Source: Oopsacas minuta (Eukaryota > Animalia > Porifera). Taken from it: DNA of 64,000 nucleotides. Every line of letters starts with the position of its first letter. The first letter of the stretch is position 1. The notes below the pieces were generated by a model that saw only the letters and a list, made by a program, of their open reading frames with translations, was not told where the DNA came from and made no database searches. Position numbers and translations under genes: made by a program. Shown here piece after piece: positions 47,273-60,878 of this stretch. The stretch covers positions 186,001-250,000 of the forward strand of contig JAKMXF010000365.1 of assembly GCA_024704765.1 (NCBI GenBank), written 5' to 3'.

Positions 47273-48745
47273 TCATTTTTCATTGAGAAGTACTCTCTTG
47301 CGTAGAGACTCGTCCCGTAGACTATCTTCATCCTCGTCTTCTCTGTCACCATATAGATCATCCTTAACTTGTTCCAACCGTTCGGCCTTCTTTTTAGAAC
47401 AAGAGGTCCTGTTCAGTATACCGGCGTTACCTAGGTCTAGGAAGTATAGTGTCAGGCAGAATAGTAGTGTAACACACAAACACATACAGAAGAATAGCTC
47501 TAGCACTAAGTAGCCGTACTGGTCTAGCAGTACTCCGGCTACAATAGATATTATAGCTAATCCCGCGTTTTGTATTGCCTGCATAATACCATATGCAGTC
47601 CCTAATGCATTCTCTTGCACGAGGTAACCGACTAGTGGCCATAGAGATGATGCTAGAATTGAATAAGATAGTCCCATTAATATCATGATACCCAAAGGAA
47701 GTATAAAGGTAAAGGCTAACATAGAATGAGCCGCTAGGGTTAAGAGGGTACCTAGCAATACCCAGAATATGGCCAGACCAGTTTTATCGATTACAAAACC
47801 GCAGAAAGGTGAAGCAACAGCTGACACGATATAGACAGCACTGTTTGTAGAAGAAGCGAGGACAGAGCCCTCTCCGTACTTCTGCTGGAAGAATACTAGT
47901 CCTAAGCTAATGAATGGAAATACAGCAGAGTAATAGAATACACAGATGAAGAATATGACCCACAGGGACAAGGGAAAATGAAGGATATCCTTCAGTCTAA
48001 TCGGTTCCTCAGATTTAACTATCCTGTTCTCAACTAGCTTCTCAGCTCGCTTGTCTAACAGACCAAGCACTACAGCACCTAAGAGGGACAAAATACATAT
48101 TACAAGCCCCACGTCAAGACATATCCCCAGGGCCGTAAATCCACTGAAATGAGAGTCCACCATTTTCTTGAAAAGAGGTCCTAATGTCAGCATGTTGAAA
48201 GTAGAACCGAGACGAGACACACTAATCAGCAGACCAAATACGAAACTAAATTCCTTTCCTTTGAACCAAATAACTGCATAGGTATTCTGCGTAACGGTCA
48301 GACTCTCGCCTCCTAAACCAAACACAAAGCGTCCTACACACATAACTGGGAAGGAACCAAAATGAGCACCAGCGGCGAATATCAGCTGTCCTATACACAA
48401 GAGAGAGCTAAAGATTACTGCCCCTAGTCTGTGTCCGAATACACGGTCAAGCAGATACCCTCCTATGACAGATAGAATCACGTTAGGCCAGGAATAAAGC
48501 GAGTAGAACAATTCGTATCGGGTCTTATCGATGGACAGGGTCTTAAGCATGGGGCCTTCTAGCGAAGCGGGGTTATCAAAACAGAAATAGGAACCGAACG
48601 ATAAGGTGCACATAAAAAATAGGATAATAAGTCGGTGTAGAAGGGTAGAGGGATCGGTGGGGTGTGTGAACTCTCGTAGGAACCAATTTTGTTGTTTCTT
48701 CTCCTCTTGAGAAGTACCTAGTAACCGAGTACTCTCGCTATCCAT
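47273..48745 (-). CDS. MFSD1: Lysosomal MFS transporter MFSD1, single exon
   Basis: CTLSFGSYFCFDNP, LYSWPNVIL, GRFVFGLGGESL, WFKGKE, GTAYGIMQAIQNAGL; N-terminal dileucine-like TRLL. Confidence 0.95.
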   Translation of the reverse strand: MDSESTRLLGTSQEEKKQQNWFLREFTHPTDPSTLLHRLIILFFMCTLSFGSYFCFDNPASLEGPMLKTLSIDKTRYELFYSLYSWPNVILSVIGGYLLDRVFGHRLGAVIFSSLLCIGQLIFAAGAHFGSFPVMCVGRFVFGLGGESLTVTQNTYAVIWFKGKEFSFVFGLLISVSRLGSTFNMLTLGPLFKKMVDSHFSGFTALGICLDVGLVICILSLLGAVVLGLLDKRAEKLVENRIVKSEEPIRLKDILHFPLSLWVIFFICVFYYSAVFPFISLGLVFFQQKYGEGSVLASSTNSAVYIVSAVASPFCGFVIDKTGLAIFWVLLGTLLTLAAHSMLAFTFILPLGIMILMGLSYSILASSLWPLVGYLVQENALGTAYGIMQAIQNAGLAIISIVAGVLLDQYGYLVLELFFCMCLCVTLLFCLTLYFLDLGNAGILNRTSCSKKKAERLEQVKDDLYGDREDEDEDSLRDESLRKRVLLNEK

Positions 48746-49130
48746 TGGAGAGTTCTAACAAGAAATATAAATTACAAAAGTGTAAGAATGCACTGCATTA
48801 TATTTCCTGAGGATTGTCCAGTTGAAACGAGCAAAATTGTTGAATTTTGGTCAGGTTACCCAAGAATCCGAAATGTACATTTGAAAATCTCGAAAATGTA
48901 TTTTTTTGAAATATTTTGGGTAATTTTAGGTATAATAGGGGGGAGATCGAGAATTCCAGGGATTTACAAGCACGCTTGCTTGTAACCTTGGTATCAAATG
49001 ATAATTTACAGAATAAAGCAATCTTAGCCTTTTATATTATTCCAATATTCCTAGTGATAAAGCATAGCAATCTATATCTGATATATTATCTATTCATTAT
49101 CCACTGTTTGCAAATAATTTTGAAGGAAAA

Positions 49131-52100
49131 TTGGAAATGCTGGCCCGTAAAGAGAGTACAGATGAAGATGAATTCCATTCCCCCGTAAGAAAATCCTCTT
49201 TCTTCCAGGCCCCTCCTTTCTCTGCTAAGCGCGCTAACAAGAAATCCTCTGTAGTAGACGAGACCTTACCTGACTTATTCCTCTCTCAGAGCTCTGCCTC
49301 CGATAAGACGGACAGTAAACAGAATTTCAAAGTTTGTGTCCGCGTACGTCCTCTAATCCCCAGAGAGCATCTAACCGGTAGTATTACCTGTGTGGATCTG
49401 CCCCCTGACCAACAGACGGTCCAGATCTACAAGCCTTCCCCGACAACCACCATAGACGGTAACCCGAATACCTTAGTTCAAACACCTGACAGCAATACAA
49501 CAAAGGAACACACATTCTCATTTGACAGAGTATACGGTCCCGCTACCACACAACTGGACCTCTACAGTACAGCGGTCCGTCCTGTCGTCCTAAATATCCT
49601 TGAAGGGTATAACGGGAGTATTATAGCTTACGGACAGACATCAGCTGGTAAGACCTACACCATGGAAGGCGGACAGGGGGGCGTATCTGACGTTACCCGT
49701 GGGATAATCCCCCGCGTCGCCGAGGAGATATTCTCATACATTGAGAAGTCCTCAAATTCAGCTAGCAGGTTTCTAGTAAGAGCTTCTTTCATGCAATTAT
49801 ACAACGAACAGCTACAAGACCTCCTCCACCCTCCCAGACAGGGACAACCCAAACAACCCCTGAAAATAAGAGAAGTACCCACAGGCATTTATGTACAGGG
49901 CCTATCTGAATCCGTTGCCAAAGGGCCACAGGATATAATCGAGCTTATGCGTAGAGGATCACAGCACCGTATAACAGCTAGTACTCAACTTAACTGGAGC
50001 TCTTCTAGGAGCCACGCCCTATTCTCGATAATAGTTGAACATTCCGAAGTATCTACCGTATCCAAGAAGAAGGTTATAACTATTGGAAAGCTGAACCTGG
50101 TCGATTTAGCTGGTAGTGAGAGGGTCAAAGATTCTGGCGCTGAAGGGGAGAGATTTGGGGAAGCATGCAAGATAAATTCTAGTCTGACTTCTTTAGGGAA
50201 AGTTATTTTAGCTCTCACAGCTAGAGGGAAGGGTCAGCTACACGTACCATACAGAGATACTAAGATAACATTCTTATTACGGGATAGTTTAGGGGGGAAC
50301 TGTCGTACTACTTTAATAACAAATATCACTCCAGCTGGGATGAGTTATTCTGAGACTCTGAGTACTTTAAGGTTTGGTAACAATGCGAAGAGTGTCCGAA
50401 ACGATGCGCGTATTAACCAGGATATGTCAGAGCAAGGGTTGTTACTAGCTTACGAGAGAGAGCTCCAGAAGTTAAGAAATGAGTTGGAGACAGCTTCACA
50501 TAAACAGGGTGGTAACCAGGACAACGGGAGGCTAGAAGTCCTGGAGTACGAGCTGAGAGGAGCTCACGAGATCAATGAACAGGTACAACAGACCTTGAGG
50601 GAGCGGGAACAAGAGATAGTGAATACTCACAAGGAGCAGAACAAACTCAGAGAGAAAATTAGTACTATGGAGCAACAGTTATTGGTGGGGGGAACTCAAA
50701 TTCAGGAGATGCCAGAGTTCAGAGAAGCGGTGAGGGAAGTTGAGCAAGAGGTGAGTAGACAGTTTGAGGAGAGGATCAGAAGTCTTGAGAAGGAAAGAGA
50801 GAGGGAGAGAAGTGAGAAAGAGCAACTCCTCAAGAGACTGGAGACCTTCGAAGTGTCGTCTGCCTCGCCACCACAAACTGCGTGGGAAGACACTACACAT
50901 GCTAGTCTACAGAAATACGTAGATGCTATGAGTAATCCAGAAACAGGAATACCTCAACTTGGTCCTGACATATCTGTGGGTTTCTGTGGACAATCAGCTG
51001 TAAAATGGTTCCAGAGTAATATGCTGGGGGTAAGTGATAACGAGCAGGCAGTTAAGGTAGGTCAACAGCTGATGGAATATGGAGTTATATTAGGGGCTAG
51101 TGGGAGAGAAATATTCTCAGATGGAGAATTCGATCTGTTTCAATTTTCACCGGAGTATTGCGGTATTTCTACTTCATCTCCGGTTAAGAGAGTATCTGCA
51201 GGAATGGTACGGACTCCCTCCTTCACTTCTGAGCTATATCGTCCCTCCAGTCGTGAAGCTTACAGCTCGTACCTCAACTTGTCCCCCTCTCCCCCCTCAA
51301 CTGCTCCTGATTTGGGACAGTTTGGTGGTAGACCTCATGCATATAGCGCTATGAGTATGAACGCTGATTCCCTGTACGAGTCATCTGGGAGCTCCGGGGG
51401 ACTGTCCGCCCTCCACTCGGCAGCCGGAAGGGGTGAGACTATCCTAGTTAAGTCTCTTGTACCAACATACGGGGTAGACTGTAGAGACCAATCAGGACGT
51501 ACCTCCCTCATGCATTCAGTGATAGGAGGTAGACACAGATGTGTTAGTATGCTACTTAAGATGAGAGCTGATATTCATACTACTGATGTTAACGGCAGGA
51601 CAGCATTGCTATGGGCTGCGTACTACGGACACTTGGAAGTGCTTAAAGTACTGATCAAGCACGACAAACGTGTGTTGGACTTCACAGACCCTGAAGGGAG
51701 GACGGCGCTCCACTGGGCGACTAAACCAGACAATGTAGATTGTCTCCGTCTGGTAGCAAAACACTGCTCAAAAGATTTAATAACTCTACAGGATAAAGAT
51801 GATAGTAATGCTCTGATGTGGGCAGTCCTATGTGGACACCCGGTTCATTTAAACATCCTCCTCAAACAGTGTCCTCTCTCTAACCTCTCTCAGGGTGATA
51901 CCATGGGTCACACCCCTCTACACTACGCGGTTGGTATTGGACAAGAGTCCTGCTGTCAAGTTATCCTCAAGCATGCTCCTGAAGTAGCATTAATACCGGA
52001 TATACATGGACGGTGTCCTATCCACCTAGCTATAACAGAGACTAACTCTCTTGAGGTCTTACACACCCTTCTATCCTTGGGTCATAAATATAGCGGTATA

Positions 52101-52373
52101 AACTCGACCGACAAAAAGATGGCTACAGCATTACACTGGGCTGCAGCACTAAACAAGCTTGATATGGTTAAGCTATTACTCGAATTTGGAGCTGTCCCTG
52201 ATTGCAAAGACCTTAGAGGATATACCCCGCTACATTATGCTTTGAATAAGAGTCATAAGGAAGTAGTGAAGGTATTCGAACAGCTGGAGAGACCAGTTTC
52301 TTCACTAAGCACCGTGAGCAGTGTGGAACCGTCTAACCAGCAAACTCTATTTCAAAGAGTTATCAAGAATTGA
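49131..52373 (+). CDS. Kinesin motor + coiled coil + DEP domain + ankyrin repeats, single exon, 1080 aa
   Basis: Motor: VCVRVRP, FSFDRVY, GQTSAGKT, SSRSH, LVDLAGSER, LLRDSLGGN. DEP-like: FCGQSAVKWF...AVKVGQQLMEYGVI...FSDGEFDLFQF. About 8 ankyrin repeats (GRTALLWAA, GRTALHWA, GHTPLHYA, GYTPLHYA). Confidence 0.93.
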   Translation: MEMLARKESTDEDEFHSPVRKSSFFQAPPFSAKRANKKSSVVDETLPDLFLSQSSASDKTDSKQNFKVCVRVRPLIPREHLTGSITCVDLPPDQQTVQIYKPSPTTTIDGNPNTLVQTPDSNTTKEHTFSFDRVYGPATTQLDLYSTAVRPVVLNILEGYNGSIIAYGQTSAGKTYTMEGGQGGVSDVTRGIIPRVAEEIFSYIEKSSNSASRFLVRASFMQLYNEQLQDLLHPPRQGQPKQPLKIREVPTGIYVQGLSESVAKGPQDIIELMRRGSQHRITASTQLNWSSSRSHALFSIIVEHSEVSTVSKKKVITIGKLNLVDLAGSERVKDSGAEGERFGEACKINSSLTSLGKVILALTARGKGQLHVPYRDTKITFLLRDSLGGNCRTTLITNITPAGMSYSETLSTLRFGNNAKSVRNDARINQDMSEQGLLLAYERELQKLRNELETASHKQGGNQDNGRLEVLEYELRGAHEINEQVQQTLREREQEIVNTHKEQNKLREKISTMEQQLLVGGTQIQEMPEFREAVREVEQEVSRQFEERIRSLEKERERERSEKEQLLKRLETFEVSSASPPQTAWEDTTHASLQKYVDAMSNPETGIPQLGPDISVGFCGQSAVKWFQSNMLGVSDNEQAVKVGQQLMEYGVILGASGREIFSDGEFDLFQFSPEYCGISTSSPVKRVSAGMVRTPSFTSELYRPSSREAYSSYLNLSPSPPSTAPDLGQFGGRPHAYSAMSMNADSLYESSGSSGGLSALHSAAGRGETILVKSLVPTYGVDCRDQSGRTSLMHSVIGGRHRCVSMLLKMRADIHTTDVNGRTALLWAAYYGHLEVLKVLIKHDKRVLDFTDPEGRTALHWATKPDNVDCLRLVAKHCSKDLITLQDKDDSNALMWAVLCGHPVHLNILLKQCPLSNLSQGDTMGHTPLHYAVGIGQESCCQVILKHAPEVALIPDIHGRCPIHLAITETNSLEVLHTLLSLGHKYSGINSTDKKMATALHWAAALNKLDMVKLLLEFGAVPDCKDLRGYTPLHYALNKSHKEVVKVFEQLERPVSSLSTVSSVEPSNQQTLFQRVIKN

Positions 52374-52799
52374 ATCTAATTTGTAAATCCTTTCTTCGAA
52401 TTTCTTACATTTCTCTTTATTATATTTCTAGCTTGTGAGTAGACTGACTGTTCTAATTATTTTCACACTTCCGGCCGAGTGATTGTGTAAAAATAATTTC
52501 CAAATTATCATAGCAACCTGTACTATTAATAACTAACACTTTTGTTAATTAACTTAGACTCGCGAAACCGTTAATAATACCAAATATAAAATTAATTTCC
52601 GTTGTTTTTCAAATCACAGGAATGAAAATATTCACACTTCGTAATTACTTTCTTTTGAAAGAATTGTATGAAAGTTTTAAGAAATGCGATTTGTTATTAG
52701 TCTATGATTGGTATTTGATTAATTATGAATATCTGACTGCCGCAAAGGAAATAGTTAGATTCCTGTTTATTCTCATTTATAAGATTCTATTTAGCTAAC

Positions 52800-55710
52800 A
52801 TGTCATCCGTAAAGAAGTATGTTCCAGATGAATGGCACGCTTCAAACAGACTACAGTACTCCAGGGCAGAACAGTCTCGTTTGGCTAGTCAGCAGATGAG
52901 AGATGAGACTGCTCGTCTACTCATGGACACAGATGCTCGTACGGTCCGTTCACAAGAGGACAGTACTAATAAACTGATTAGACGGATAGATGACGCTAGT
53001 TTCTGGAAAGGAGAGTTAGAAAGAAAGTTCCAAGACACAGAGGAAGAGATCGGAGAGCTGAATGGTTCAATTCAGCAGCTGGAGGCTGAGCTTAACTCTA
53101 CTCAATTACCTCTTGAGGTATGATTAACCGCGAGCTTATTATGAATAGATCAATCTGTATTACACGGGGGATATATATTTGAAGGAATTATCCACGAATA
53201 ACTGTAGAATATTCGCATCAATCTTCGCTATAATAATTATGTAATAGAAAGTAATAACATATAATTGCAGAGCTCATATTATCTGTTTGGATGGTTTTTA
53301 CAGAGATTCAGTATTTTATTGTACACATCTTTTTAGATAAACCACCTTGTTGAAACACACAGCTAGTATATTTGGCATGATTTTTGAATGACTTCACAAT
53401 TTGATTGTATTATTAGACTATTTGTGTTAATACTTATTCACAATAAACTAACACACAACATGGCACTTATAGCGCTGACGTAATGACCTTTATAGAATAG
53501 AATACTGTTACAGACTTGCAGTCATGTTGTGTAGTTCTGTACACAGCCATCTATTGAATTGTAATACATGTTCCTTTATAATTCAAATAATATTAGTCAA
53601 ATATTTGTATGATACTTTAATAGGAATTATTGGGAAATCAGAGTCAGTTAGTTTATCAAAACTTGAATAACAAGGAACTAATAAATATAATGAATACTTT
53701 TAACCTATTGTTTTCCATTAGGTATCACGTCAGTGCCTTGAGTATCGGACACATCGTGAGACAATCGATCTTGTACATGACGAGCCTGAGAAACAGCTGT
53801 TGAAGGAGGTGGAGGTTATACGAGGAGTCCAAAATATGCTGGAGTGTACTCTCAATAATGCTAAGGAACAATCAAGAATATTGAAATCCTGTCGCTTTAA
53901 ACTGGGGAAAGATTTAGAGGACAAATCTTCCTCTCTTATGATTGATGAGCATTGTCACGGTCTAACTAACGAATCTTCCCAGCTAGGATTGCATACAGGA
54001 CCAGCTCCGATTGTGTCACAGGTTATCACACCCGAACAATGGCAAGAATTCACACACGGGAATATTCAGTTCGCTGAGAGACACAGAGCTGCCTCACAGA
54101 CCCTGAGGGGGGTAGTAGATGGAGTCATATCTCAGTGTATAGGGGATATTATTGAGCAACGAGAGAGTACTGATCTCTCTCTAAGCATTAGAATTAAGGT
54201 ATTACTATTATTTTAATTGTTTTGACTGTATTTCACAAGAACCTGTGAATATTCAAATTCAATTCTACCTAACTTGTCTCTAGCTATATTGATAGTTATT
54301 CCCATAAATTTGCATTAGTGAATATTGAGAACATGAAACCATCTTCACACATTTTATCATAATTATAGCATACCTGTTAATTAAAGCCATATTTGCGTGT
54401 ATCGACGACTACCTGTGTCATCCTAAACAATCGCGTATAATTCTAATCAATATTAAATCAAAATGCACACATTCCTGGTAATACTTTGAGAATTTACTAG
54501 CTGTAACACAGCCAGAATGTTTTCTAGAATATTTTTAGAATTACTATTATCTTAACTTTGACGAAGCTATTACGCTGAGTAATAATACTTCTATAATTTG
54601 CTCATAGATAATACTTTATCCTTCTGGTTACAAAATACCTACTCAGTGCAGCCCTTGCTATCCATCAGTGTTTGATTACGTTCCTTAGTTTCTATTGTTT
54701 AAAGTACAACTAGGAGAGTTGTAGATTTTATTTTGTAACTTGCCATATCCGATTTATCTTTTGACCTTATACACAGTTTATCTGTGGGCGGTTTGTCTAA
54801 ATAAAGCTGTTAGTGCCAGGCTAGTTTAATGAGTTTCTACTCATAGCCGAATCATAAAGTTAAGTTCATGAGACCGGAATTATTGTCAGCTAGGATAGCA
54901 TATATTCTGAATACTGAAGTAAGTATACTCACTAGTTTCCTACTAATAATCATGAGTGTATACTCTCTCAGCTTGATAGCTCTGCTAGCTAGAATATCCA
55001 CCAACTGCTGATCTATTCAAATCCATGTAATTATTCATATCTTGGTTATTTCCCCTTACTTCATTTAGTGGTGATCTCTCCTTCAACTGAAGTGATTCAC
55101 ATCATATCCTATAGTGTAATATTCCATCATTATTATTGAAAATTTTCCAAATGAAACAATCTATATTATGTTTGTTAATGCATTCAAACGATTAACACTA
55201 CTGCAGAAGTTGTAATGTTTTCTAGTATATTTACTTACACTAAAAGTATAATCTTGTATACGTATTCAATGTAATGCTGAATTGATGTATTATTGCTTGT
55301 AGGAAACAAATGAAGCAAAGACTAATCTGGAGAATCAGCTCGAGCAGACTGGAGAGGAAATAGTTGAGGTTGAGAAGACGATTGAGGATTTAAACAAGGG
55401 TATTGATGCTAAGGCTCCGCCCCTTATGGTAGCCCACACACGACTAGACAATAGACAGATACGTCCTCGTGTGGAGCTTGTACGTGACCCCCCACAGACC
55501 AGACTTGAAACCGAGGTTTCTGACCTAAATACTGTTCTGGACAAACTCCGTTCTCAGCTACAACTAGCAGAAACTACTCTGAAGCATTTATCTCGCACTA
55601 AAATCGATCTGGAAGAGGATATTCGTGTAAAGAAGAAATCTCTCTTCACTGACCAAGAGCAGTGCGTAAATCTACGTACTAAACTGAAGGCTACAGAATC
55701 CAATAGCTAA
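52800..55710 (+). CDS. TEKT1: Tektin (TEKT1-like); exons 52800-53117, 53722-54198, 55303-55710, about 400 aa
   Basis: YVPDEWHASN, FWKGEL, CLEYR..R..IDLVHD, DLEDK..L.IDE.C, VAHTRLDNR..RPRVELVRD. Three phase-0 exons. Confidence 0.92.
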
Positions 55711-56324: not shown

Positions 56325-57923
56325 ATGCAGCGTGTAGTAGTTTGGCCTCGTTATGAACTACTAACCCCGCTTATTCTGCACAAGCCTCCTTCAGGGCTCC
56401 TCTGTTCCAGACTCACTCACCCTCACTTGATTAAATTCTCCGCTTACATAAGAGCAAAGACCAAAAGTACTCGTCCACTGCTAAATTACACAATCTGGCT
56501 ACATGTAGCTACCAGTAAGCTAAGCATGGATGAGGAGACAGCCTGGCTGTATATAGACTGCTATGAAGCGGCTAGAGAGGTAACGAGAGAGGAGAGAGCT
56601 GAACAACAACAGAGATTAGCCTCACTACAGAGCGGAGAGGAATTAATTGAGTATAGGAAAGATGTATGTGTAGATGCATTAAGCTTTATATTATATCTAT
56701 ACACACAAAATGCTCCGTATTCAGGGAGAACATTCGTACCTGACACAGGCTGGCCAGAACAAAGTCCTAGAGAGGGAACAAGATTTGATGAAGAGTACCA
56801 GTTCCTAAACTTCATACGCACAGGTGTTAAAGACATCTTACAGCTGATATCTGAAGTACCAGCTAGAGACAATGAATCACAGATTACGATAGAATGCATT
56901 GACTGTTTGGATTTAGTATTATCTTGCTCGTTAGATGGTAGAGTAGTTAGCATAAGAGAATTGCTACTGAGCTCTTCGTTACGACATGATTGTGATTTTT
57001 CTAATAATACTTTTTCCGTTAAGACGCTATCCTCTTGGTTGTTACAGCATCTATCAATCAGTCCTTACGGGGTATCTTCTATCATGAATGGACACCGTGA
57101 TCATACGAATTATTACTATAGGAGTAGTCATAGAGGGAGAGTATGTGGGAACTATTCTATAGCTCCACTCGGCCACCAGATCACTGTATTAGACCAGGTT
57201 CCTATACAGACTATACTCCTAGAAGCTAGAGACACACAGATTTCTTATGCATTCATTCGTAAGTGTAGAGACACGAATATATCCCTCCTAACACCACATA
57301 GAACTGTGGTTATAGAGAGGTGTTATGAATGTGATATTTGTCTAGCTCCCGTCGATTCTTGTCTCGTGATTAAGAAATGTGAGAATGTAACTGTTCGTTG
57401 TTTTGCTCGTAAAGTTGTTCTGTTTTCTCTGAAAGGCTGTAAGCTTTATATCAATACTCCTACCCAACCTGTGTTCTTATACAATAACTCTAATGTACAG
57501 CTATCTCCTGCTAATCTTCATTATCCTGCTATTGAGAAACAGCTGACTACATATCCAATGTGTGGAATTAATCTCTGGGATTATCCTACACTTCTTAGTA
57601 CGGATACTTCTCAGATAGGAGCTACACCTTATAAACTTATTGACCCGATCTCTTTCTCCGTACACCTTACACCCTTCTCCAATCCTGGAAAACTCTCCCT
57701 TCCTTACCCGCTACCCAGGAATTTCCGCGAGGCCCTGGCTGACCAGAAGAATGGTATGAAGGAGTGGCATGAACTAGAAGGGACTCTCAACAGCTCAGAA
57801 GAGCTTGTCCTAAAACAAGCGTTAGATGAAGGTTTTAATGAGTATCTATCCACTGAGAAATTATCTCAGAATATCCAACAAGTATTCGCTATTATAGATA
57901 AACATTCCAGTGATCATTCCTAG
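56325..57923 (+). CDS. TBCCD1: TBCC domain-containing protein 1
   Basis: VVVWPR...W.HVA..KL..DEETAWLY N-terminus and a C-CAP/cofactor-C beta-helix (IRKCRD..ISLL.P...IERC...KCENV). Confidence 0.88.
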   Translation: MQRVVVWPRYELLTPLILHKPPSGLLCSRLTHPHLIKFSAYIRAKTKSTRPLLNYTIWLHVATSKLSMDEETAWLYIDCYEAAREVTREERAEQQQRLASLQSGEELIEYRKDVCVDALSFILYLYTQNAPYSGRTFVPDTGWPEQSPREGTRFDEEYQFLNFIRTGVKDILQLISEVPARDNESQITIECIDCLDLVLSCSLDGRVVSIRELLLSSSLRHDCDFSNNTFSVKTLSSWLLQHLSISPYGVSSIMNGHRDHTNYYYRSSHRGRVCGNYSIAPLGHQITVLDQVPIQTILLEARDTQISYAFIRKCRDTNISLLTPHRTVVIERCYECDICLAPVDSCLVIKKCENVTVRCFARKVVLFSLKGCKLYINTPTQPVFLYNNSNVQLSPANLHYPAIEKQLTTYPMCGINLWDYPTLLSTDTSQIGATPYKLIDPISFSVHLTPFSNPGKLSLPYPLPRNFREALADQKNGMKEWHELEGTLNSSEELVLKQALDEGFNEYLSTEKLSQNIQQVFAIIDKHSSDHS

Positions 57924-58289
57924 TAACCAAAATAGAAAATTGTTATTGACATGTAAGCGATTATTGACTTCAGCTGTTACGTGTAAAATATTTCACAAAT
58001 ATTACTCAATCTTTCTGCTAATTTCTGATTAAAATAGCCTTTATTCACAGCACTTTCAATGAGTTTATTCATACTAAGCAAAAACAAAATCTATTATTAT
58101 CTGACAAACATAACTGCTCTATTCATCACTTCAAATAAGTGTTATAATCATATTATTGTATACTTCTGTTTTAGATGGGTGAGTGTAGTTTATTTGTCAC
58201 GTGGATATCACCTACTCAATATGCTTATACTGGACAGAAACATCAATTTATAATTGTATGATCTTCCCCTGAGTAATATTTCACACGTT

Positions 58290-60878
58290 ATGGAAGTTAA
58301 TTGCAGGAATTTCCTTATACTTTTGCTTATTTTGATGTTCTCAGAATCCAACTATTCTACCAAATGCTTTCCTAATGACGCAAATAACTCAACTATTTGT
58401 GAGAAGAATTATGGAATATTTGGTATTTTATTACAAAACGAATCTCTCAATTACATTTCTCTTCACAACAATTCTGTACATATTCTACAGAGATTATCTT
58501 CCAACTCTTTGCTATGTAGTTCATTAGATCCTAGAAATACTAGCCTATTGGTATATGCAGAGAGTACTGATAATAGTGCTGTTATAAAGGAGGCTGTATT
58601 TGATGCTAATACTCATGAAGTCTCTTATACAAATGTACTGTACTCGTATCTGCTAGGTGAGATCACTGGTATTGCAATAGAATCTAGGACAAAGCTCTTG
58701 TACTGGATAGATGGGAGTAGAGAAGTTATAGAAATTGGTACTCTAGAGGGTGACAAGAGATCAGTACTTGTATCGACTAATTCTAACCCAAACTTCCTTC
58801 TATTAGACACCAATACAAGTAAGCTCTTCTGGATTGATACAAGAGATTCTCTTGTATTCATAAACAGGATTTCCTTGGATGGCTCCAGTAGAGAAACTAT
58901 TCTCCGTCTACTCAATACCCGTATTATCTCTCTTGCTAAAGCTACTCTGTATTCACAGGGAAGTATATTTGAATACTTATTCTATGCAGATGGGGGTGAT
59001 ACTATCAATTGTTATGTAGTAGATTTAGACTTGACTCATATTCTTAGAACTCTATCTAGGTCTCATACTTCTATGAAGGTTTTTGGTGATGAATTATACT
59101 GGTTTGATTATGACACGACTAGAGTATACTCTGCTACGATTACCCCAGGGACTCCTCCATCCCTCTCTAATATAACAGTTGTATTCAAGACAGATGAGGC
59201 TATAAGAGAGATTAATCTTGTTTCTACTACGTCAGTTACCTACCCGGATACTCCCTGCAATTCTGAAGGTCTATGCTCTTATTTGTGTCTGCCTAGTGCT
59301 ATTAATACTAAATACAAATGTGTTTGTCCAGTGGGTATAGAATCAAAACCCAATTGCTCTCTCCTTCCTACTCATTTCCTTCTAATATCTCTACACAGAC
59401 AGATCCAGTATATTTCCCTTGATATCGTATACACACTATCCGCTATGCTATACCAGGAGGACAGGCTTATCACCGGAGCTGTAGACGCGTACACGCCGAT
59501 TAGTGGTACTCCCGTTATAATATGGAGTGATATAACCACTAAGAACAGCTGGGCCATCAAACAGCTGGATACAGCAACACGCATGGTTACCGTATTGGTA
59601 GATGGAATATTCACTAGAGGATTAGCAGTAGACCAAATGACTGGTAACATGTTCTATACGGACAGATTCAATAGCAGTATTAAAGTGTATAATATTAATA
59701 ATGGAGCTATGAAAACACTGATACAAAATGATATCTCAGAGAAAGTCTCTAAGCCCAGATCTGTAGCAATTGATCTCATTGATGGGTTTATGTTCTGGAC
59801 AGATTGGGGACTGGATACCATCGAGCGGTCCCGTCTGGATGGGACAGATCGTCGTATCCTCCTCTCTGAAAATATTCACACCCCCAGCGGTCTCTCAATA
59901 GACCGTACTAACAAGTTAATCTACTGGGTCGACTATTCGTATAAAACAATAGAGAGTTGTGATTACAATGGCTTCCATAGAAATACAATAATCAGAAATC
60001 TCTCACAGCCCTACAGTATGACGCTAAATTATCCTGAGTTATACTTTACAGACTGGAAAGAAAATACTCTTAATTATCTAATTCTCTCCTATTCTGATCC
60101 GATATACTTAATCACACACAAGTATAGAGATATTATAATGGATGTAGAGTACATAGATACGAGCATTAAGCCTTATGGTCCTTGCAGTATTGATAACGGA
60201 GGATGTACGCATATATGTTTACAGATAGGAGATGGTAAACATGTTTGTGAGTGTAATCACACTTCGCCAGATTGTGAATTACAAATAACCACTACTATCA
60301 CTATGATGAATGTAACTACACACATTCCTACTGCCATATTATATACAGATACATACAATATCTATTACGTCATACTAATCGCTCTATCTGCTGTGCTGAT
60401 ATTTCTACTGGTGATATTCTGTGTATTACTTATACTATATTCTAAGAAGAGAATACACAAACATTCGTTCTTCACATCTGCCCGCCCAGCATCTGGAAAT
60501 ACTCCGCACACAGATTCTCCAGTTCGTCCTGCTATCACTGATGCTATTTTCTCTCTGTCAAGCAATTCACCGCCCCCTCCGACCGAGGGACAAGTGTACA
60601 CAGAGATTACACAAGAACCTGTATCACCACAAACTCCAGGTTACGTAAGGCTCGAAAATTCTGATAATTCTACTCATTCTACTCCTGCCGTAAAGGATAT
60701 TTTCTATACTCCAAGCAAAGATTTACTCAAATCTATATCTATACACACCCCCAAGAGGTTATACGGACGCTCTAAAGCTAGCTACCAATTACTACCTAAG
60801 TTAGAAGAATCTTTTGAATTGAATTTTCTTTCTCCTTCCAAAAAAACAGAAACTCATTATCATTCAAGTTTGTTTTAA
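58290..60878 (+). CDS. LRP-like type I receptor: signal peptide, 2 x (YWTD propeller-EGF), TM, Ser/Pro-rich tail; single exon
   Basis: First ATG at 58290 (MEVNCRNFLILLLILM). LYWID/LFWID, CSYLCLP, MFYTD, MFWTDWG, IYWVD, LYFTDW, CSIDNGGCTHICL; TM YYVILIAL...LLILY. Confidence 0.88.
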   Translation: MEVNCRNFLILLLILMFSESNYSTKCFPNDANNSTICEKNYGIFGILLQNESLNYISLHNNSVHILQRLSSNSLLCSSLDPRNTSLLVYAESTDNSAVIKEAVFDANTHEVSYTNVLYSYLLGEITGIAIESRTKLLYWIDGSREVIEIGTLEGDKRSVLVSTNSNPNFLLLDTNTSKLFWIDTRDSLVFINRISLDGSSRETILRLLNTRIISLAKATLYSQGSIFEYLFYADGGDTINCYVVDLDLTHILRTLSRSHTSMKVFGDELYWFDYDTTRVYSATITPGTPPSLSNITVVFKTDEAIREINLVSTTSVTYPDTPCNSEGLCSYLCLPSAINTKYKCVCPVGIESKPNCSLLPTHFLLISLHRQIQYISLDIVYTLSAMLYQEDRLITGAVDAYTPISGTPVIIWSDITTKNSWAIKQLDTATRMVTVLVDGIFTRGLAVDQMTGNMFYTDRFNSSIKVYNINNGAMKTLIQNDISEKVSKPRSVAIDLIDGFMFWTDWGLDTIERSRLDGTDRRILLSENIHTPSGLSIDRTNKLIYWVDYSYKTIESCDYNGFHRNTIIRNLSQPYSMTLNYPELYFTDWKENTLNYLILSYSDPIYLITHKYRDIIMDVEYIDTSIKPYGPCSIDNGGCTHICLQIGDGKHVCECNHTSPDCELQITTTITMMNVTTHIPTAILYTDTYNIYYVILIALSAVLIFLLVIFCVLLILYSKKRIHKHSFFTSARPASGNTPHTDSPVRPAITDAIFSLSSNSPPPPTEGQVYTEITQEPVSPQTPGYVRLENSDNSTHSTPAVKDIFYTPSKDLLKSISIHTPKRLYGRSKASYQLLPKLEESFELNFLSPSKKTETHYHSSLF

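What the first reader, a model, noticed from the sequence alone, without database searches (positions are those of the whole stretch)
49131..52373. Intronless kinesin-coiled coil-DEP-ankyrin fusion motor
Seen: one 3.2-kb open frame joins an intact kinesin motor (P-loop GQTSAGKT, switch I SSRSH, switch II DLAGSE), a long coiled coil, a DEP-like module (~50980-51150) and about 8 ankyrin repeats. Known: none of the standard bilaterian kinesin families I know carries DEP plus ankyrin as a tail. DEP domains target membranes/receptors in Dishevelled and RGS proteins, and these GRTALHWA-type ankyrins resemble inversin-class ciliary/PCP proteins. Inference: a motor with a built-in membrane-signalling cargo adaptor, possibly ciliary or used in syncytial transport.
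Basis: partly seen in the sequence, partly recalled or inferred. Interest (0 to 1): 0.82.

Follow-up and report, generated by a model that had tools for sequence, protein, structure and literature searches.

The report
Kinesin-17 motor with DEP-ankyrin tail
This is an intact, transcribed glass-sponge gene for a kinesin motor carrying a DEP domain and nine ankyrin repeats; it belongs to the little-studied Kinesin-17 family, and the same layout occurs in choanoflagellates and other sponges, so it is real and conserved but not new.

Summary
Window 49137-52373 (+) is one uninterrupted 1078-aa frame. It has a complete kinesin motor (Pfam E 1.5e-103), a heptad-rich stalk, a DEP domain and nine ankyrin repeats. 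The DEP only just passes Pfam (33.5 vs 32.7 bits), but a family profile and a predicted fold confirm it.

The architecture is not unprecedented. Wickstead et al. 2010 (Additional file 3) list Monosiga brevicollis 28628 as Kinesin-17, "KISc-DEP-ANKx6". I found about 30 proteins with it: eight close unnamed relatives, the sponges Corticium, Oscarella and Amphimedon, five named choanoflagellates, and Pigoraptor (motor plus DEP only). No named eumetazoan had it.

A motor-domain tree puts the tail-bearing clade (100/97) beside tail-less protist Kinesin-17-like motors (94/94), apart from this genome's Kinesin-1, -2, -5, -6 and -8.

The genome fits Oopsacas minuta. It holds a second, intron-containing paralogue. 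The Corticium orthologue spans 19.9 kb, so intronlessness is derived.

An RNA-like run covers the whole frame. One contig joins position 49053 to a spliced-leader-like sequence.

Function is untested. The best guess is a plus-end transport motor with a protein-binding tail, perhaps flagellum-associated. A syncytium-specific role is unlikely, and the DEP lacks the basic hairpin used for membrane binding.

The parts
49053..49054 (+). AG of a probable spliced-leader trans-splice acceptor (ttattccaatattcctAG|TGATAAAGC); the mature mRNA would begin at 49055
   Evidence: In the RNA-like run X4, one contig carries 18 foreign letters, TCTTCATAAAAAACTTAC, before position 49053 (table 7). The contig's fit starts at 49053; if the leader itself ends in AG, the junction lies at 49054|49055. 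The 18-mer is absent from the window. It occurs exactly 5 times elsewhere in the genome, against 0 for the reversed control. In four copies it is followed by AG|GTAAGT inside a conserved unit of about 190 nt.
49055..49136 (+). 5' UTR with no upstream ATG
   Evidence: Read directly from the sequence. The first ATG of the open frame is at 49137.
49137..52373 (+). Single-exon coding sequence, 1078 codons plus a TGA stop
   Evidence: ORF list. The same 1078-aa protein is stored in the protein collection (P0001). Run X4 shows depth in every bin across the frame with no joints. Compared with a 79%-identical relative, synonymous sites are saturated and pN is 0.13.
49137..49322 (+). N-terminal extension (aa 1-62), poorly conserved
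   Evidence: Column conservation is 0.25-0.47. pN is 0.20.
49323..50411 (+). Kinesin motor domain (aa 63-425) with P-loop, switch I and switch II
   Evidence: Pfam PF00225, E 1.5e-103, full profile 1-327. Motifs and their conservation. pN 0.081.
50412..50882 (+). Neck linker (VRNDARINQD, which begins at aa 420 inside the motor part) followed by a heptad-rich stalk (aa 426-582); presumed dimerising coiled coil
   Evidence: The neck is conserved across the family. The crude heptad score peaks at aa 421-560. There is a weak Pfam Leu_zip hit. Dimerisation is not shown: one search gave no verdict.
50898..51158 (+). DEP domain (aa 588-674) with a shortened, non-basic beta-hairpin arm
51168..51395 (+). 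Disordered Ser/Pro-rich linker (aa 678-753)
   Evidence: pLDDT below 50 in the tail model. Its length varies among homologues. pN is 0.25.
51408..52289 (+). Nine ankyrin repeats (aa 758-1051)
   Evidence: Pfam Ank families. Nine helix pairs at pLDDT above 90. pN 0.107.

Best explanation
The gene encodes a member of the Kinesin-17 family. It belongs to a subfamily, found so far only in holozoans, in which the N-terminal motor and stalk are followed by a DEP domain, a disordered linker and an ankyrin-repeat solenoid.

Shown here:
- The gene is intact and under purifying selection in every folded module.
- An RNA-like run covers it from about 80 nt upstream of the ATG to the stop.
- Its coding sequence is one exon.
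- It is one of two such paralogues in this genome. The other has introns.

Inferred from motor position and intact catalytic motifs: it is a plus-end-directed, ATP-driven microtubule motor that dimerises through its neck and stalk.

Inferred from the tail: the ankyrin solenoid, probably together with the DEP domain, binds protein cargo or an anchoring partner. Direct binding to acidic lipid is less likely, because this lineage's DEP is acidic and lacks the basic hairpin.

Inferred only from the distribution of Kinesin-17 among organisms that build cilia, and from this subfamily's presence in flagellated filastereans, choanoflagellates and sponges: it acts at or near the flagellum or basal apparatus of collar-type cells.
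For: Architecture.

Family placement:
- The Monosiga orthologue P0029 (MONBRDRAFT_28628) is listed as Kinesin-17, KISc-DEP-ANKx6, in PMC2867816 Additional file 3.
- In the careful ML tree the tail-bearing clade has support 100/97 and the tail-less protist clade 95/97. Their union has 94/94, against this genome's Kinesin-1, -2 (part), -5 (part), -6 and -8 and three unnamed paralogues.
- The protist clade carries motifs shared by the two published Kinesin-17 reference sequences, Chlre_175469 and Auran_2300.
- A tail-less member (Andalucia, P0033) finds this locus as its best hit in the genome, at 415 bits. Next comes the Kinesin-1 locus at 263 bits. The two motor pieces of the C210 paralogue score 207 and 85 bits, and I did not add them.

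Conservation and selection:
- About 30 proteins share the architecture.
- pN is 0.08-0.15 in the folded modules and pS is 0.73-0.82.

Expression:
- Run X4 has depth in every bin over the frame and low depth in the flanking intergenic DNA. It has none in the neighbouring tektin intron.
- There is a spliced-leader-like junction at 49053-49055. Spliced leaders are reported in another glass sponge.

Ciliary association of Kinesin-17: PMC2867816, PMC5795050 and PMC4947347.
Against: - No functional datum exists for any Kinesin-17. The 2010 paper says so, and I found nothing later.
- The ciliary link is phylogenetic profiling only.
- Dimerisation was not supported by the complex prediction, which gave no verdict.
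- The window protein and its eight closest relatives replace the conserved arginine of the microtubule-facing helix (KLTRLLQ becomes KITFLLR). Microtubule binding may therefore be altered.
- My tree lacked full-length named references for most kinesin families. Its Kinesin-2 and Kinesin-5 representatives were single-exon fragments.
- X4 is classed as RNA only by its coverage pattern and adaptor type. It is kept as contigs, and the leader junction rests on one contig.
Confidence: 0.6

Rival explanations
1. It is a general cytoplasmic transport motor for membrane organelles along the microtubule bundles of the glass-sponge syncytium. In this view the DEP domain docks it on membranes or receptors.
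For: DEP domains of Dishevelled, RGS and Epac proteins do target membranes or receptors (established knowledge; matching folds). The organism is syncytial (PMC10280926). The gene appears to be expressed in the sampled tissue.
Against: The subfamily is conserved in unicellular choanoflagellates, in Pigoraptor and in cellular sponges, so it did not arise for syncytia. In this lineage the DEP hairpin arm is shortened, has no basic residue, and the domain has net charge -9.
Confidence: 0.2
2. It is a tethering or regulatory kinesin rather than a long-range transporter. It would hold an ankyrin-bound signalling complex on microtubules, or tune microtubule dynamics.
For: The window protein and its eight closest relatives have an unusual KITFLLR helix in place of KLTRLLQ. 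The tail consists of long interaction modules. There was no support for stalk dimerisation (which is not evidence either way).
Against: The P-loop, switch I, switch II and neck linker are all conserved. The motor is the most strongly constrained module, with pN 0.081.
Confidence: 0.12
3. It is a divergent Kinesin-2 (KIF3/KIF17-like) motor that happened to acquire a new tail.
For: The best solved match is KIF3B. Automatic names on some homologues read 'kinesin family protein 3/17' or 'Kinesin-II 95 kDa subunit'.
Against: The KIF3B score is only 279 bits, close to Kinesin-1 at 269. This genome's own KIF3B-like gene (L010) falls outside the clade. Wickstead et al. place the Monosiga orthologue in Kinesin-17, a family separate from Kinesin-2.
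Confidence: 0.05
4. The long frame is a chance or assembly-made fusion of two neighbouring genes, a kinesin and a DEP-ankyrin protein.
For: None found.
Against: The same order of domains occurs in about 30 proteins from independent assemblies and transcriptomes, including NCBI gene models with introns. Three DNA-like runs cover the locus with no differences. The RNA-like run shows depth in every bin across the junctions.
Confidence: 0.02

Closest known systems
Monosiga brevicollis protein 28628 (MONBRDRAFT_28628), listed as Kinesin-17 with architecture KISc-DEP-ANKx6 in Wickstead, Gull & Richards 2010 (PMC2867816, Additional file 3)
   Same: It has the same order of domains: N-terminal motor, stalk, DEP and ankyrin repeats. 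It lies in the same well-supported motor clade.
   Different: Identity is only 37-40%. The Monosiga protein is longer (1270 aa), with a longer region between motor and DEP, and it keeps the full-length hairpin arm with basic residues. It was only tabulated. The KISc-ANK character was set aside as unreliable and never studied.
Tail-less Kinesin-17 of ciliated protists (for example Chlamydomonas KIN17A/B and the Paramecium, oomycete and Andalucia proteins)
   Same: They form the sister clade by motor domain, at 44-47% identity. They share the neck and motifs such as GLSE..V, and the reciprocal best-hit test agrees.
   Different: They have no Pfam domain beyond the motor and are about 775-1000 aa long. 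The function of these proteins is also unknown.
Kinesin-2 (KIF3A/B/C, KIF17/OSM-3), the anterograde intraflagellar transport motor
   Same: It is the closest solved structure family. It also has an N-terminal motor and a similar neck linker, and both families are tied to ciliated organisms.
   Different: It is a separate clade. Kinesin-2 tails bind KAP3 or IFT particles and carry no DEP or ankyrin repeats (established knowledge).
DEP domains of DEPDC5, P-Rex1, DEPTOR, RGS7/9, Dishevelled and pleckstrin
   Same: They share the winged-helix DEP fold. Profile E-values reach 1.6e-22 and TM scores are 0.63-0.70.
   Different: In this protein and its nine closest relatives the beta-hairpin arm is 9 rather than 14 residues and is uncharged. 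That arm contributes to membrane or receptor contact in Dishevelled and RGS proteins (established knowledge).

Membership tests
Kinesin superfamily | Full-length kinesin motor domain above the Pfam threshold | tested here: met
   PF00225, 346.6 bits against a cut-off of 29.3, profile positions 1-327 of 327.
Kinesin superfamily | Nucleotide-binding P-loop (GQTxxGKT/S), switch I (SSRSH) and switch II (DLAGSE) | tested here: met
   GQTSAGKT at residue 166, SSRSH at 289 and DLAGSE at 323, conserved across the family.
Kinesin-17 (Wickstead & Gull) | The motor domain falls in the Kinesin-17 clade of a superfamily phylogeny | tested here: met
   It groups at 100/97 with Monosiga 28628, which is Kinesin-17 in PMC2867816. 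It is sister at 94/94 to a protist clade that carries motifs of the Kinesin-17 references Chlre_175469 and Auran_2300, and it lies apart from the genome's Kinesin-1, -2, -5, -6 and -8. Caveat: other families were represented only by this genome's paralogues, two of them as fragments.
Kinesin-17 (Wickstead & Gull) | Reciprocal best match with tail-less family members | tested here: met
   The best non-tail hits of the window protein are the protist clade. Andalucia P0033 finds this locus at 415 bits; the next locus (Kinesin-1) scores 263, and the C210 paralogue's two motor pieces score 207 and 85 bits, not summed.
Kinesin-17 (Wickstead & Gull) | Found only in organisms that build cilia or flagella | tested here: met
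   The named holders are choanoflagellates, sponges, Pigoraptor, ciliates, oomycetes and green algae. Oopsacas larvae have multiciliated cells. This is a correlation, not a test of function.
Kinesin-2 | Orthology to KIF3 or KIF17 motors | tested here: not met
   KIF3B scores 279 bits, against 410-483 bits for true orthologue pairs in this genome. The genome's KIF3B-like exon lies outside the clade.
DEP domain (PF00610) | Sequence match above the curated threshold | tested here: met
   33.5 bits against 32.7, profile positions 18-72 only. The family profile gives E 1.6e-22 to 4e-9 against solved DEP domains.
DEP domain (PF00610) | Three-helix bundle plus beta-strands (winged-helix DEP fold) | tested here: met
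   The model has pLDDT 84.5 and elements H-H-H-E-E. The 47 best Foldseek matches are all DEP domains.
DEP domain (PF00610) | Basic beta-hairpin arm used for membrane or receptor contact in Dishevelled/RGS-type DEP domains | tested here: not met
   The arm is 9 residues (QLGPDISVG) with no K, R or H. Most homologues have 14 residues with 2-6 basic residues. The domain's net charge is -9.
Ankyrin-repeat proteins | Tandem 33-residue helix-loop-helix repeats forming a solenoid | tested here: met
   Ank_2 E 1.4e-71. Nine helix pairs at pLDDT above 90.
   Feature search on the tail returned only generic ankyrin clusters. No dedicated phylogeny was attempted.

The most novel reading that the evidence does not exclude
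The DEP-ankyrin branch of Kinesin-17 is a motor of the flagellar or collar apparatus of choanoflagellate-type cells. On this reading it arose before the split of filastereans and choanozoans, was kept (and duplicated) in sponges, and was lost in all other animals. That would make it a molecular marker linking sponge collar cells to choanoflagellates, and a way into the function of the uncharacterised Kinesin-17 family.
Probability: 0.25. Interest if true: 0.6.

Novelty: new member of a known kind. Interest (0 to 1): 0.4.

Why it matters
Kinesin-17 is one of the few ancient kinesin families with no known function. Its only lead is that it occurs in organisms with cilia.

This finding shows that a tail-bearing branch of the family (motor, DEP, ankyrin) is conserved from a flagellated filasterean through choanoflagellates to three sponge classes, with two paralogues in sponges. 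It did not turn up in any named eumetazoan.

That gives a defined, testable candidate for a motor specific to collar-type flagellated cells. It also gives a tail with recognisable interaction modules that could be used to fish for cargo.

For the scan itself, the result is mostly a correction. The architecture is real and interesting, but it was already catalogued in 2010 and is neither unique to this genome nor tied to syncytia.

Tried and rejected
- Complex prediction of two copies of the stalk (aa 418-582) gave 'no answer', score 0.01. It counts neither for nor against dimerisation.
- Feature search on the tail returned only generic ankyrin clusters, with no DEP-ankyrin family lacking a motor.
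- Rfam found no family in the putative spliced-leader RNA unit.
- Literature searches for the architecture found no paper describing it. 'Kinesin-17' in a cilium review means KIF17, which is a different thing.
- Wickstead & Gull 2006 could not be read.
- I read only the second half of the Nematostella rows in the 2010 table. None is Kinesin-17, but I did not check the remaining rows or Trichoplax.
- A retrogene origin from the second paralogue was considered and rejected. The two are only about 44% identical in the motor and fall in different clades.
- A pseudogene reading of the C210 paralogue was rejected. Its in-frame stops sit in one short GT..AG intron after DLAGSER.
- The motif GGNC[RK]T was dropped as a family marker because, from my own knowledge, Kinesin-1 has it too.
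- The large all-against-all protein search was not used. It returns no names, so it could not settle the taxonomic absence claim.
Full report
**Observation**

The window holds an uninterrupted frame from 49131 (TTG; the first ATG is at 49137) to the TGA at 52371-52373, which is 1078 codons from the ATG. Pfam finds three kinds of domain:
- A complete kinesin motor at residues 69-420, E 1.5e-103.
- A DEP domain at residues 616-670, 33.5 bits against a curated cut-off of 32.7, matching only profile positions 18-72.
- Strong ankyrin matches from about residue 759 to 1047.

**DEP domain**

The DEP score is borderline, so I tested it in two other ways.
- A profile built from the equivalent segment of 30 homologues (alignment A2) finds the DEP domains of DEPDC5 (E 1.6e-22), P-Rex1, DEPTOR, RGS7, DVL2, Epac and pleckstrin among solved structures.
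- An AlphaFold model of residues 583-680 (pLDDT 84.5; three helices and two strands) has only DEP domains among its 47 best Foldseek matches in the PDB, with TM 0.52-0.70.

A model of the whole tail shows:
- the DEP fold at residues 588-674;
- a disordered Ser/Pro-rich linker at 678-753;
- nine ankyrin helix pairs at 758-1051, at pLDDT above 90.

The segment between motor and DEP is rich in heptad-like sequence. I could not show that it forms a dimeric coiled coil, because the complex prediction gave no verdict.

**Source organism**

The window lies in a 61.46-Mb assembly of 365 contigs, and its G+C runs from 31 to 47%. This matches the published Oopsacas minuta (Hexactinellida) assembly: 365 scaffolds, about 61 Mb and 36% G+C (PMC10280926). 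The identification is an inference, because no tool named the genome.

**Is the architecture new?**

It is not.

The word search returned about 30 proteins with precomputed Kinesin + DEP + Ank domains:
- eight unnamed assemblies at 70-79% identity, presumably other glass sponges;
- one at 53%;
- the homoscleromorph sponges Corticium candelabrum (two paralogues) and Oscarella lobularis;
- the demosponge Amphimedon queenslandica;
- Monosiga brevicollis MONBRDRAFT_28628;
- many transcriptome entries.

The exact look-up named the transcriptome entries as the choanoflagellates Mylnosiga fluctuans, Choanoeca flexa, Didymoeca costata and Stephanoeca diplocostata (two copies). It also named the flagellated filasterean Pigoraptor chileana, whose protein has motor plus DEP but no Pfam ankyrin.

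[quoted passage not shown] Additional file 6 mentions KISc-ANK in Monosiga and Phytophthora, only to set it aside as an unreliable character.

I found no paper that describes or studies the subfamily. No named cnidarian, ctenophore, placozoan or bilaterian protein appeared among the DEP-bearing hits. That absence rests on one length-limited search.

**Family assignment**

Against solved structures the motor has no orthologue. KIF3B scores 279 bits and fungal Kinesin-1 scores 269. By contrast, this genome's own Kinesin-8 and Kinesin-1 score 410 and 483 bits to their human counterparts.

The best hits without a tail are protist kinesins of about 775-1000 aa from ciliates, oomycetes, green algae, Bigelowiella, Cafeteria and Andalucia. 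Nearly all of them carry motifs shared by the two Kinesin-17 reference sequences I could read in the 2010 alignment, Chlre_175469 and Auran_2300. Examples are GLSEW.V and E[EA][SC]K.IN.SL[ST][AS]LG.

I built a careful maximum-likelihood tree of 66 motor domains. Its main results are:
- the tail-bearing clade has support 100/97;
- the protist clade has support 95/97;
- their union has support 94/94.

The union is set against this genome's other paralogues, which I named by their best solved match:
- Kinesin-1, locus L002;
- Kinesin-8, L001;
- Kinesin-6, L007;
- a single-exon piece of Kinesin-5, L008;
- a single-exon piece of Kinesin-2, L010;
- three paralogues left unnamed.

In the reverse direction, the Andalucia protein finds this locus as its best match in the genome, at 415 bits over residues 60-600. 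The next locus, Kinesin-1, scores 263 bits. I did not sum the two motor pieces of the C210 paralogue, which score 207 and 85 bits.

I therefore file the protein in Kinesin-17. The caveat is that a full reference set was not available to me.

**Paralogues and introns**

A DEP scan of the genome flagged a second kinesin-DEP pair on contig C210. tblastn shows motor, DEP and ankyrin pieces in order over about 5.2 kb (L037 1912-7126). These pieces are interrupted by introns. The in-frame stops after DLAGSER lie in one short GT..AG intron.

This second gene groups at 97/95 with Corticium paralogue 2 and Amphimedon. The window gene and its close relatives form their own clade at 100/100. The relation of that clade to the Corticium-1/Oscarella pair is unresolved.

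The Corticium orthologue P0010 spans 19.9 kb for 1162 residues. The nearest relative of the window gene is again a single 1078-codon frame, with the same neighbours: MFS transporter on the opposite strand, then tektin and a TBCC-domain gene downstream. Intronlessness is therefore derived within glass sponges and is not a recent retrocopy of the other paralogue. It is unremarkable in a genome that averages 1.59 introns per gene and in which seven kinesin loci have an uninterrupted motor domain.

**Expression and transcript ends**

Four runs from one sample hold the locus. Three look like DNA, with even depth across intergenic sequence.

The fourth, X4, behaves like RNA:
- It has high depth in every bin over the MFS gene, the whole kinesin frame and the tektin exons.
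- Depth is low in the two intergenic stretches.
- There is no depth at all in 53122-53712, which is the tektin intron between the ORFs at 52800-53123 and 53800-54216.
- No joint falls inside the kinesin frame.

These are contigs, so depth is only indicative.

One X4 contig carries 18 foreign letters immediately before position 49053. That position sits at a pyrimidine-rich AG acceptor 82 nt upstream of the ATG. The 18-mer has these properties:
- It is absent from the window.
- It occurs five times exactly elsewhere in the genome, against none for the reversed control.
- In four of those places it is followed by AG|GTAAGT within a conserved unit of about 190 nt.

This is the signature of a spliced-leader RNA gene. 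Rfam has no model for it. A leader of about 37 nt is reported in the glass sponge Aphrocallistes (PMC10282587).

Taken together, this suggests that the mature mRNA starts at 49055, that there is no upstream coding exon, and that 49137 is the start codon. The junction rests on a single contig.

**Selection**

Against the 79%-identical relative, synonymous sites are saturated (pS 0.68-0.82). Non-synonymous divergence by region is as follows:

| Region | pN |
|---|---|
| Motor | 0.081 |
| Ankyrin block | 0.107 |
| Stalk | 0.129 |
| DEP | 0.150 |
| Linker | 0.249 |
| C-terminal tail | 0.451 |

Every folded module is constrained.

**Function**

An N-terminal motor with intact catalytic loops and a conserved neck linker argues for a plus-end-directed motor. 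This follows from established knowledge of kinesins.

The tail offers two protein-interaction modules.
- In the window protein and its nine closest relatives the DEP beta-hairpin arm is 9 residues rather than 14. It has no basic residue, and the domain carries net charge -9. Choanoflagellate and some other sponge copies keep a basic arm.
- Oopsacas is reported to lack Wnt and Dishevelled altogether.

A syncytium-specific role is unlikely, given the family's presence in unicellular and cellular relatives.

The only pointer to a cellular site is the distribution of Kinesin-17 among organisms that build cilia. This subfamily's presence in flagellated holozoans adds to it. The ciliary or microtubule character of the neighbouring genes (tektin, TBCC) is noted but proves nothing.

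The window protein and its eight closest relatives also replace the conserved arginine of KLTRLLQ with phenylalanine, giving KITFLLR. This might alter microtubule binding.

**Verdict**

The gene is a new member of a catalogued but unstudied branch of Kinesin-17. Interest is moderate.

They entered searches and trees only as single-exon pieces.

Noticed in passing
G000:C10:47273, C10:77411, C10:92158(-), C16:67138 (loci L038-L041); also C314:274344(-) (L042): Probable spliced-leader RNA genes. Four copies form a conserved unit of about 190 nt, ...TTTGCTTTACAAACTTTTACTACAAATTCTTCATAAAAAACTTACAG|GTAAGTTGGCTTC.... The fifth copy (C314) shares only the leader part. Rfam has no match for the unit.
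   Followed up: partly
G000:C210:about 666900-672100 (L037 1912-7126): A second kinesin-DEP-ankyrin gene in the same genome. It is multi-exon and groups with Corticium paralogue 2 and Amphimedon. Its in-frame stops after DLAGSER lie in one short GT..AG intron.
   Followed up: partly
window 52800-54216 (+) and 56325-57923 (+): The downstream neighbours are a multi-exon tektin gene (exons at 52800-53123 and 53800-54216, with no RNA-like depth between them) and a 532-aa TBCC-domain protein. The order MFS/kinesin/tektin/TBCC is conserved in the 79%-identical relative (L031). In Corticium the kinesin's neighbour is a Ubiquitin_2 + CAP-Gly protein.
   Followed up: partly
window 47273-48745 (-): An intronless 490-aa MFS transporter lies head-to-head with the kinesin, about 390 nt between the start codons. 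It is also covered by the RNA-like run.
   Followed up: no
window 50244-50264 (aa 370-376 region): The window protein and its eight closest relatives (P0001-P0008) have KITFLLR where other family members, and kinesins in general, have KLTRLLQ in the microtubule-facing helix after loop 12. P0009 has KVTLMLR.
   Followed up: partly
window 52181-52811: One low-depth contig of the RNA-like run bridges the kinesin 3' end and the tektin start codon (427 nt apart). It could be read-through, an operon-like precursor or DNA carry-over.
   Followed up: no
G000:C320:33072-34361 and C320:95612-97114: Two copies of a multi-exon kinesin gene lie about 62 kb apart, with identical HMM scores for the last motor exon (139 bits each).
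   Followed up: no
window 58254-60878 (+): An 874-aa single-frame protein with LDL-receptor class B (YWTD) repeats and an EGF-like module.
   Followed up: no
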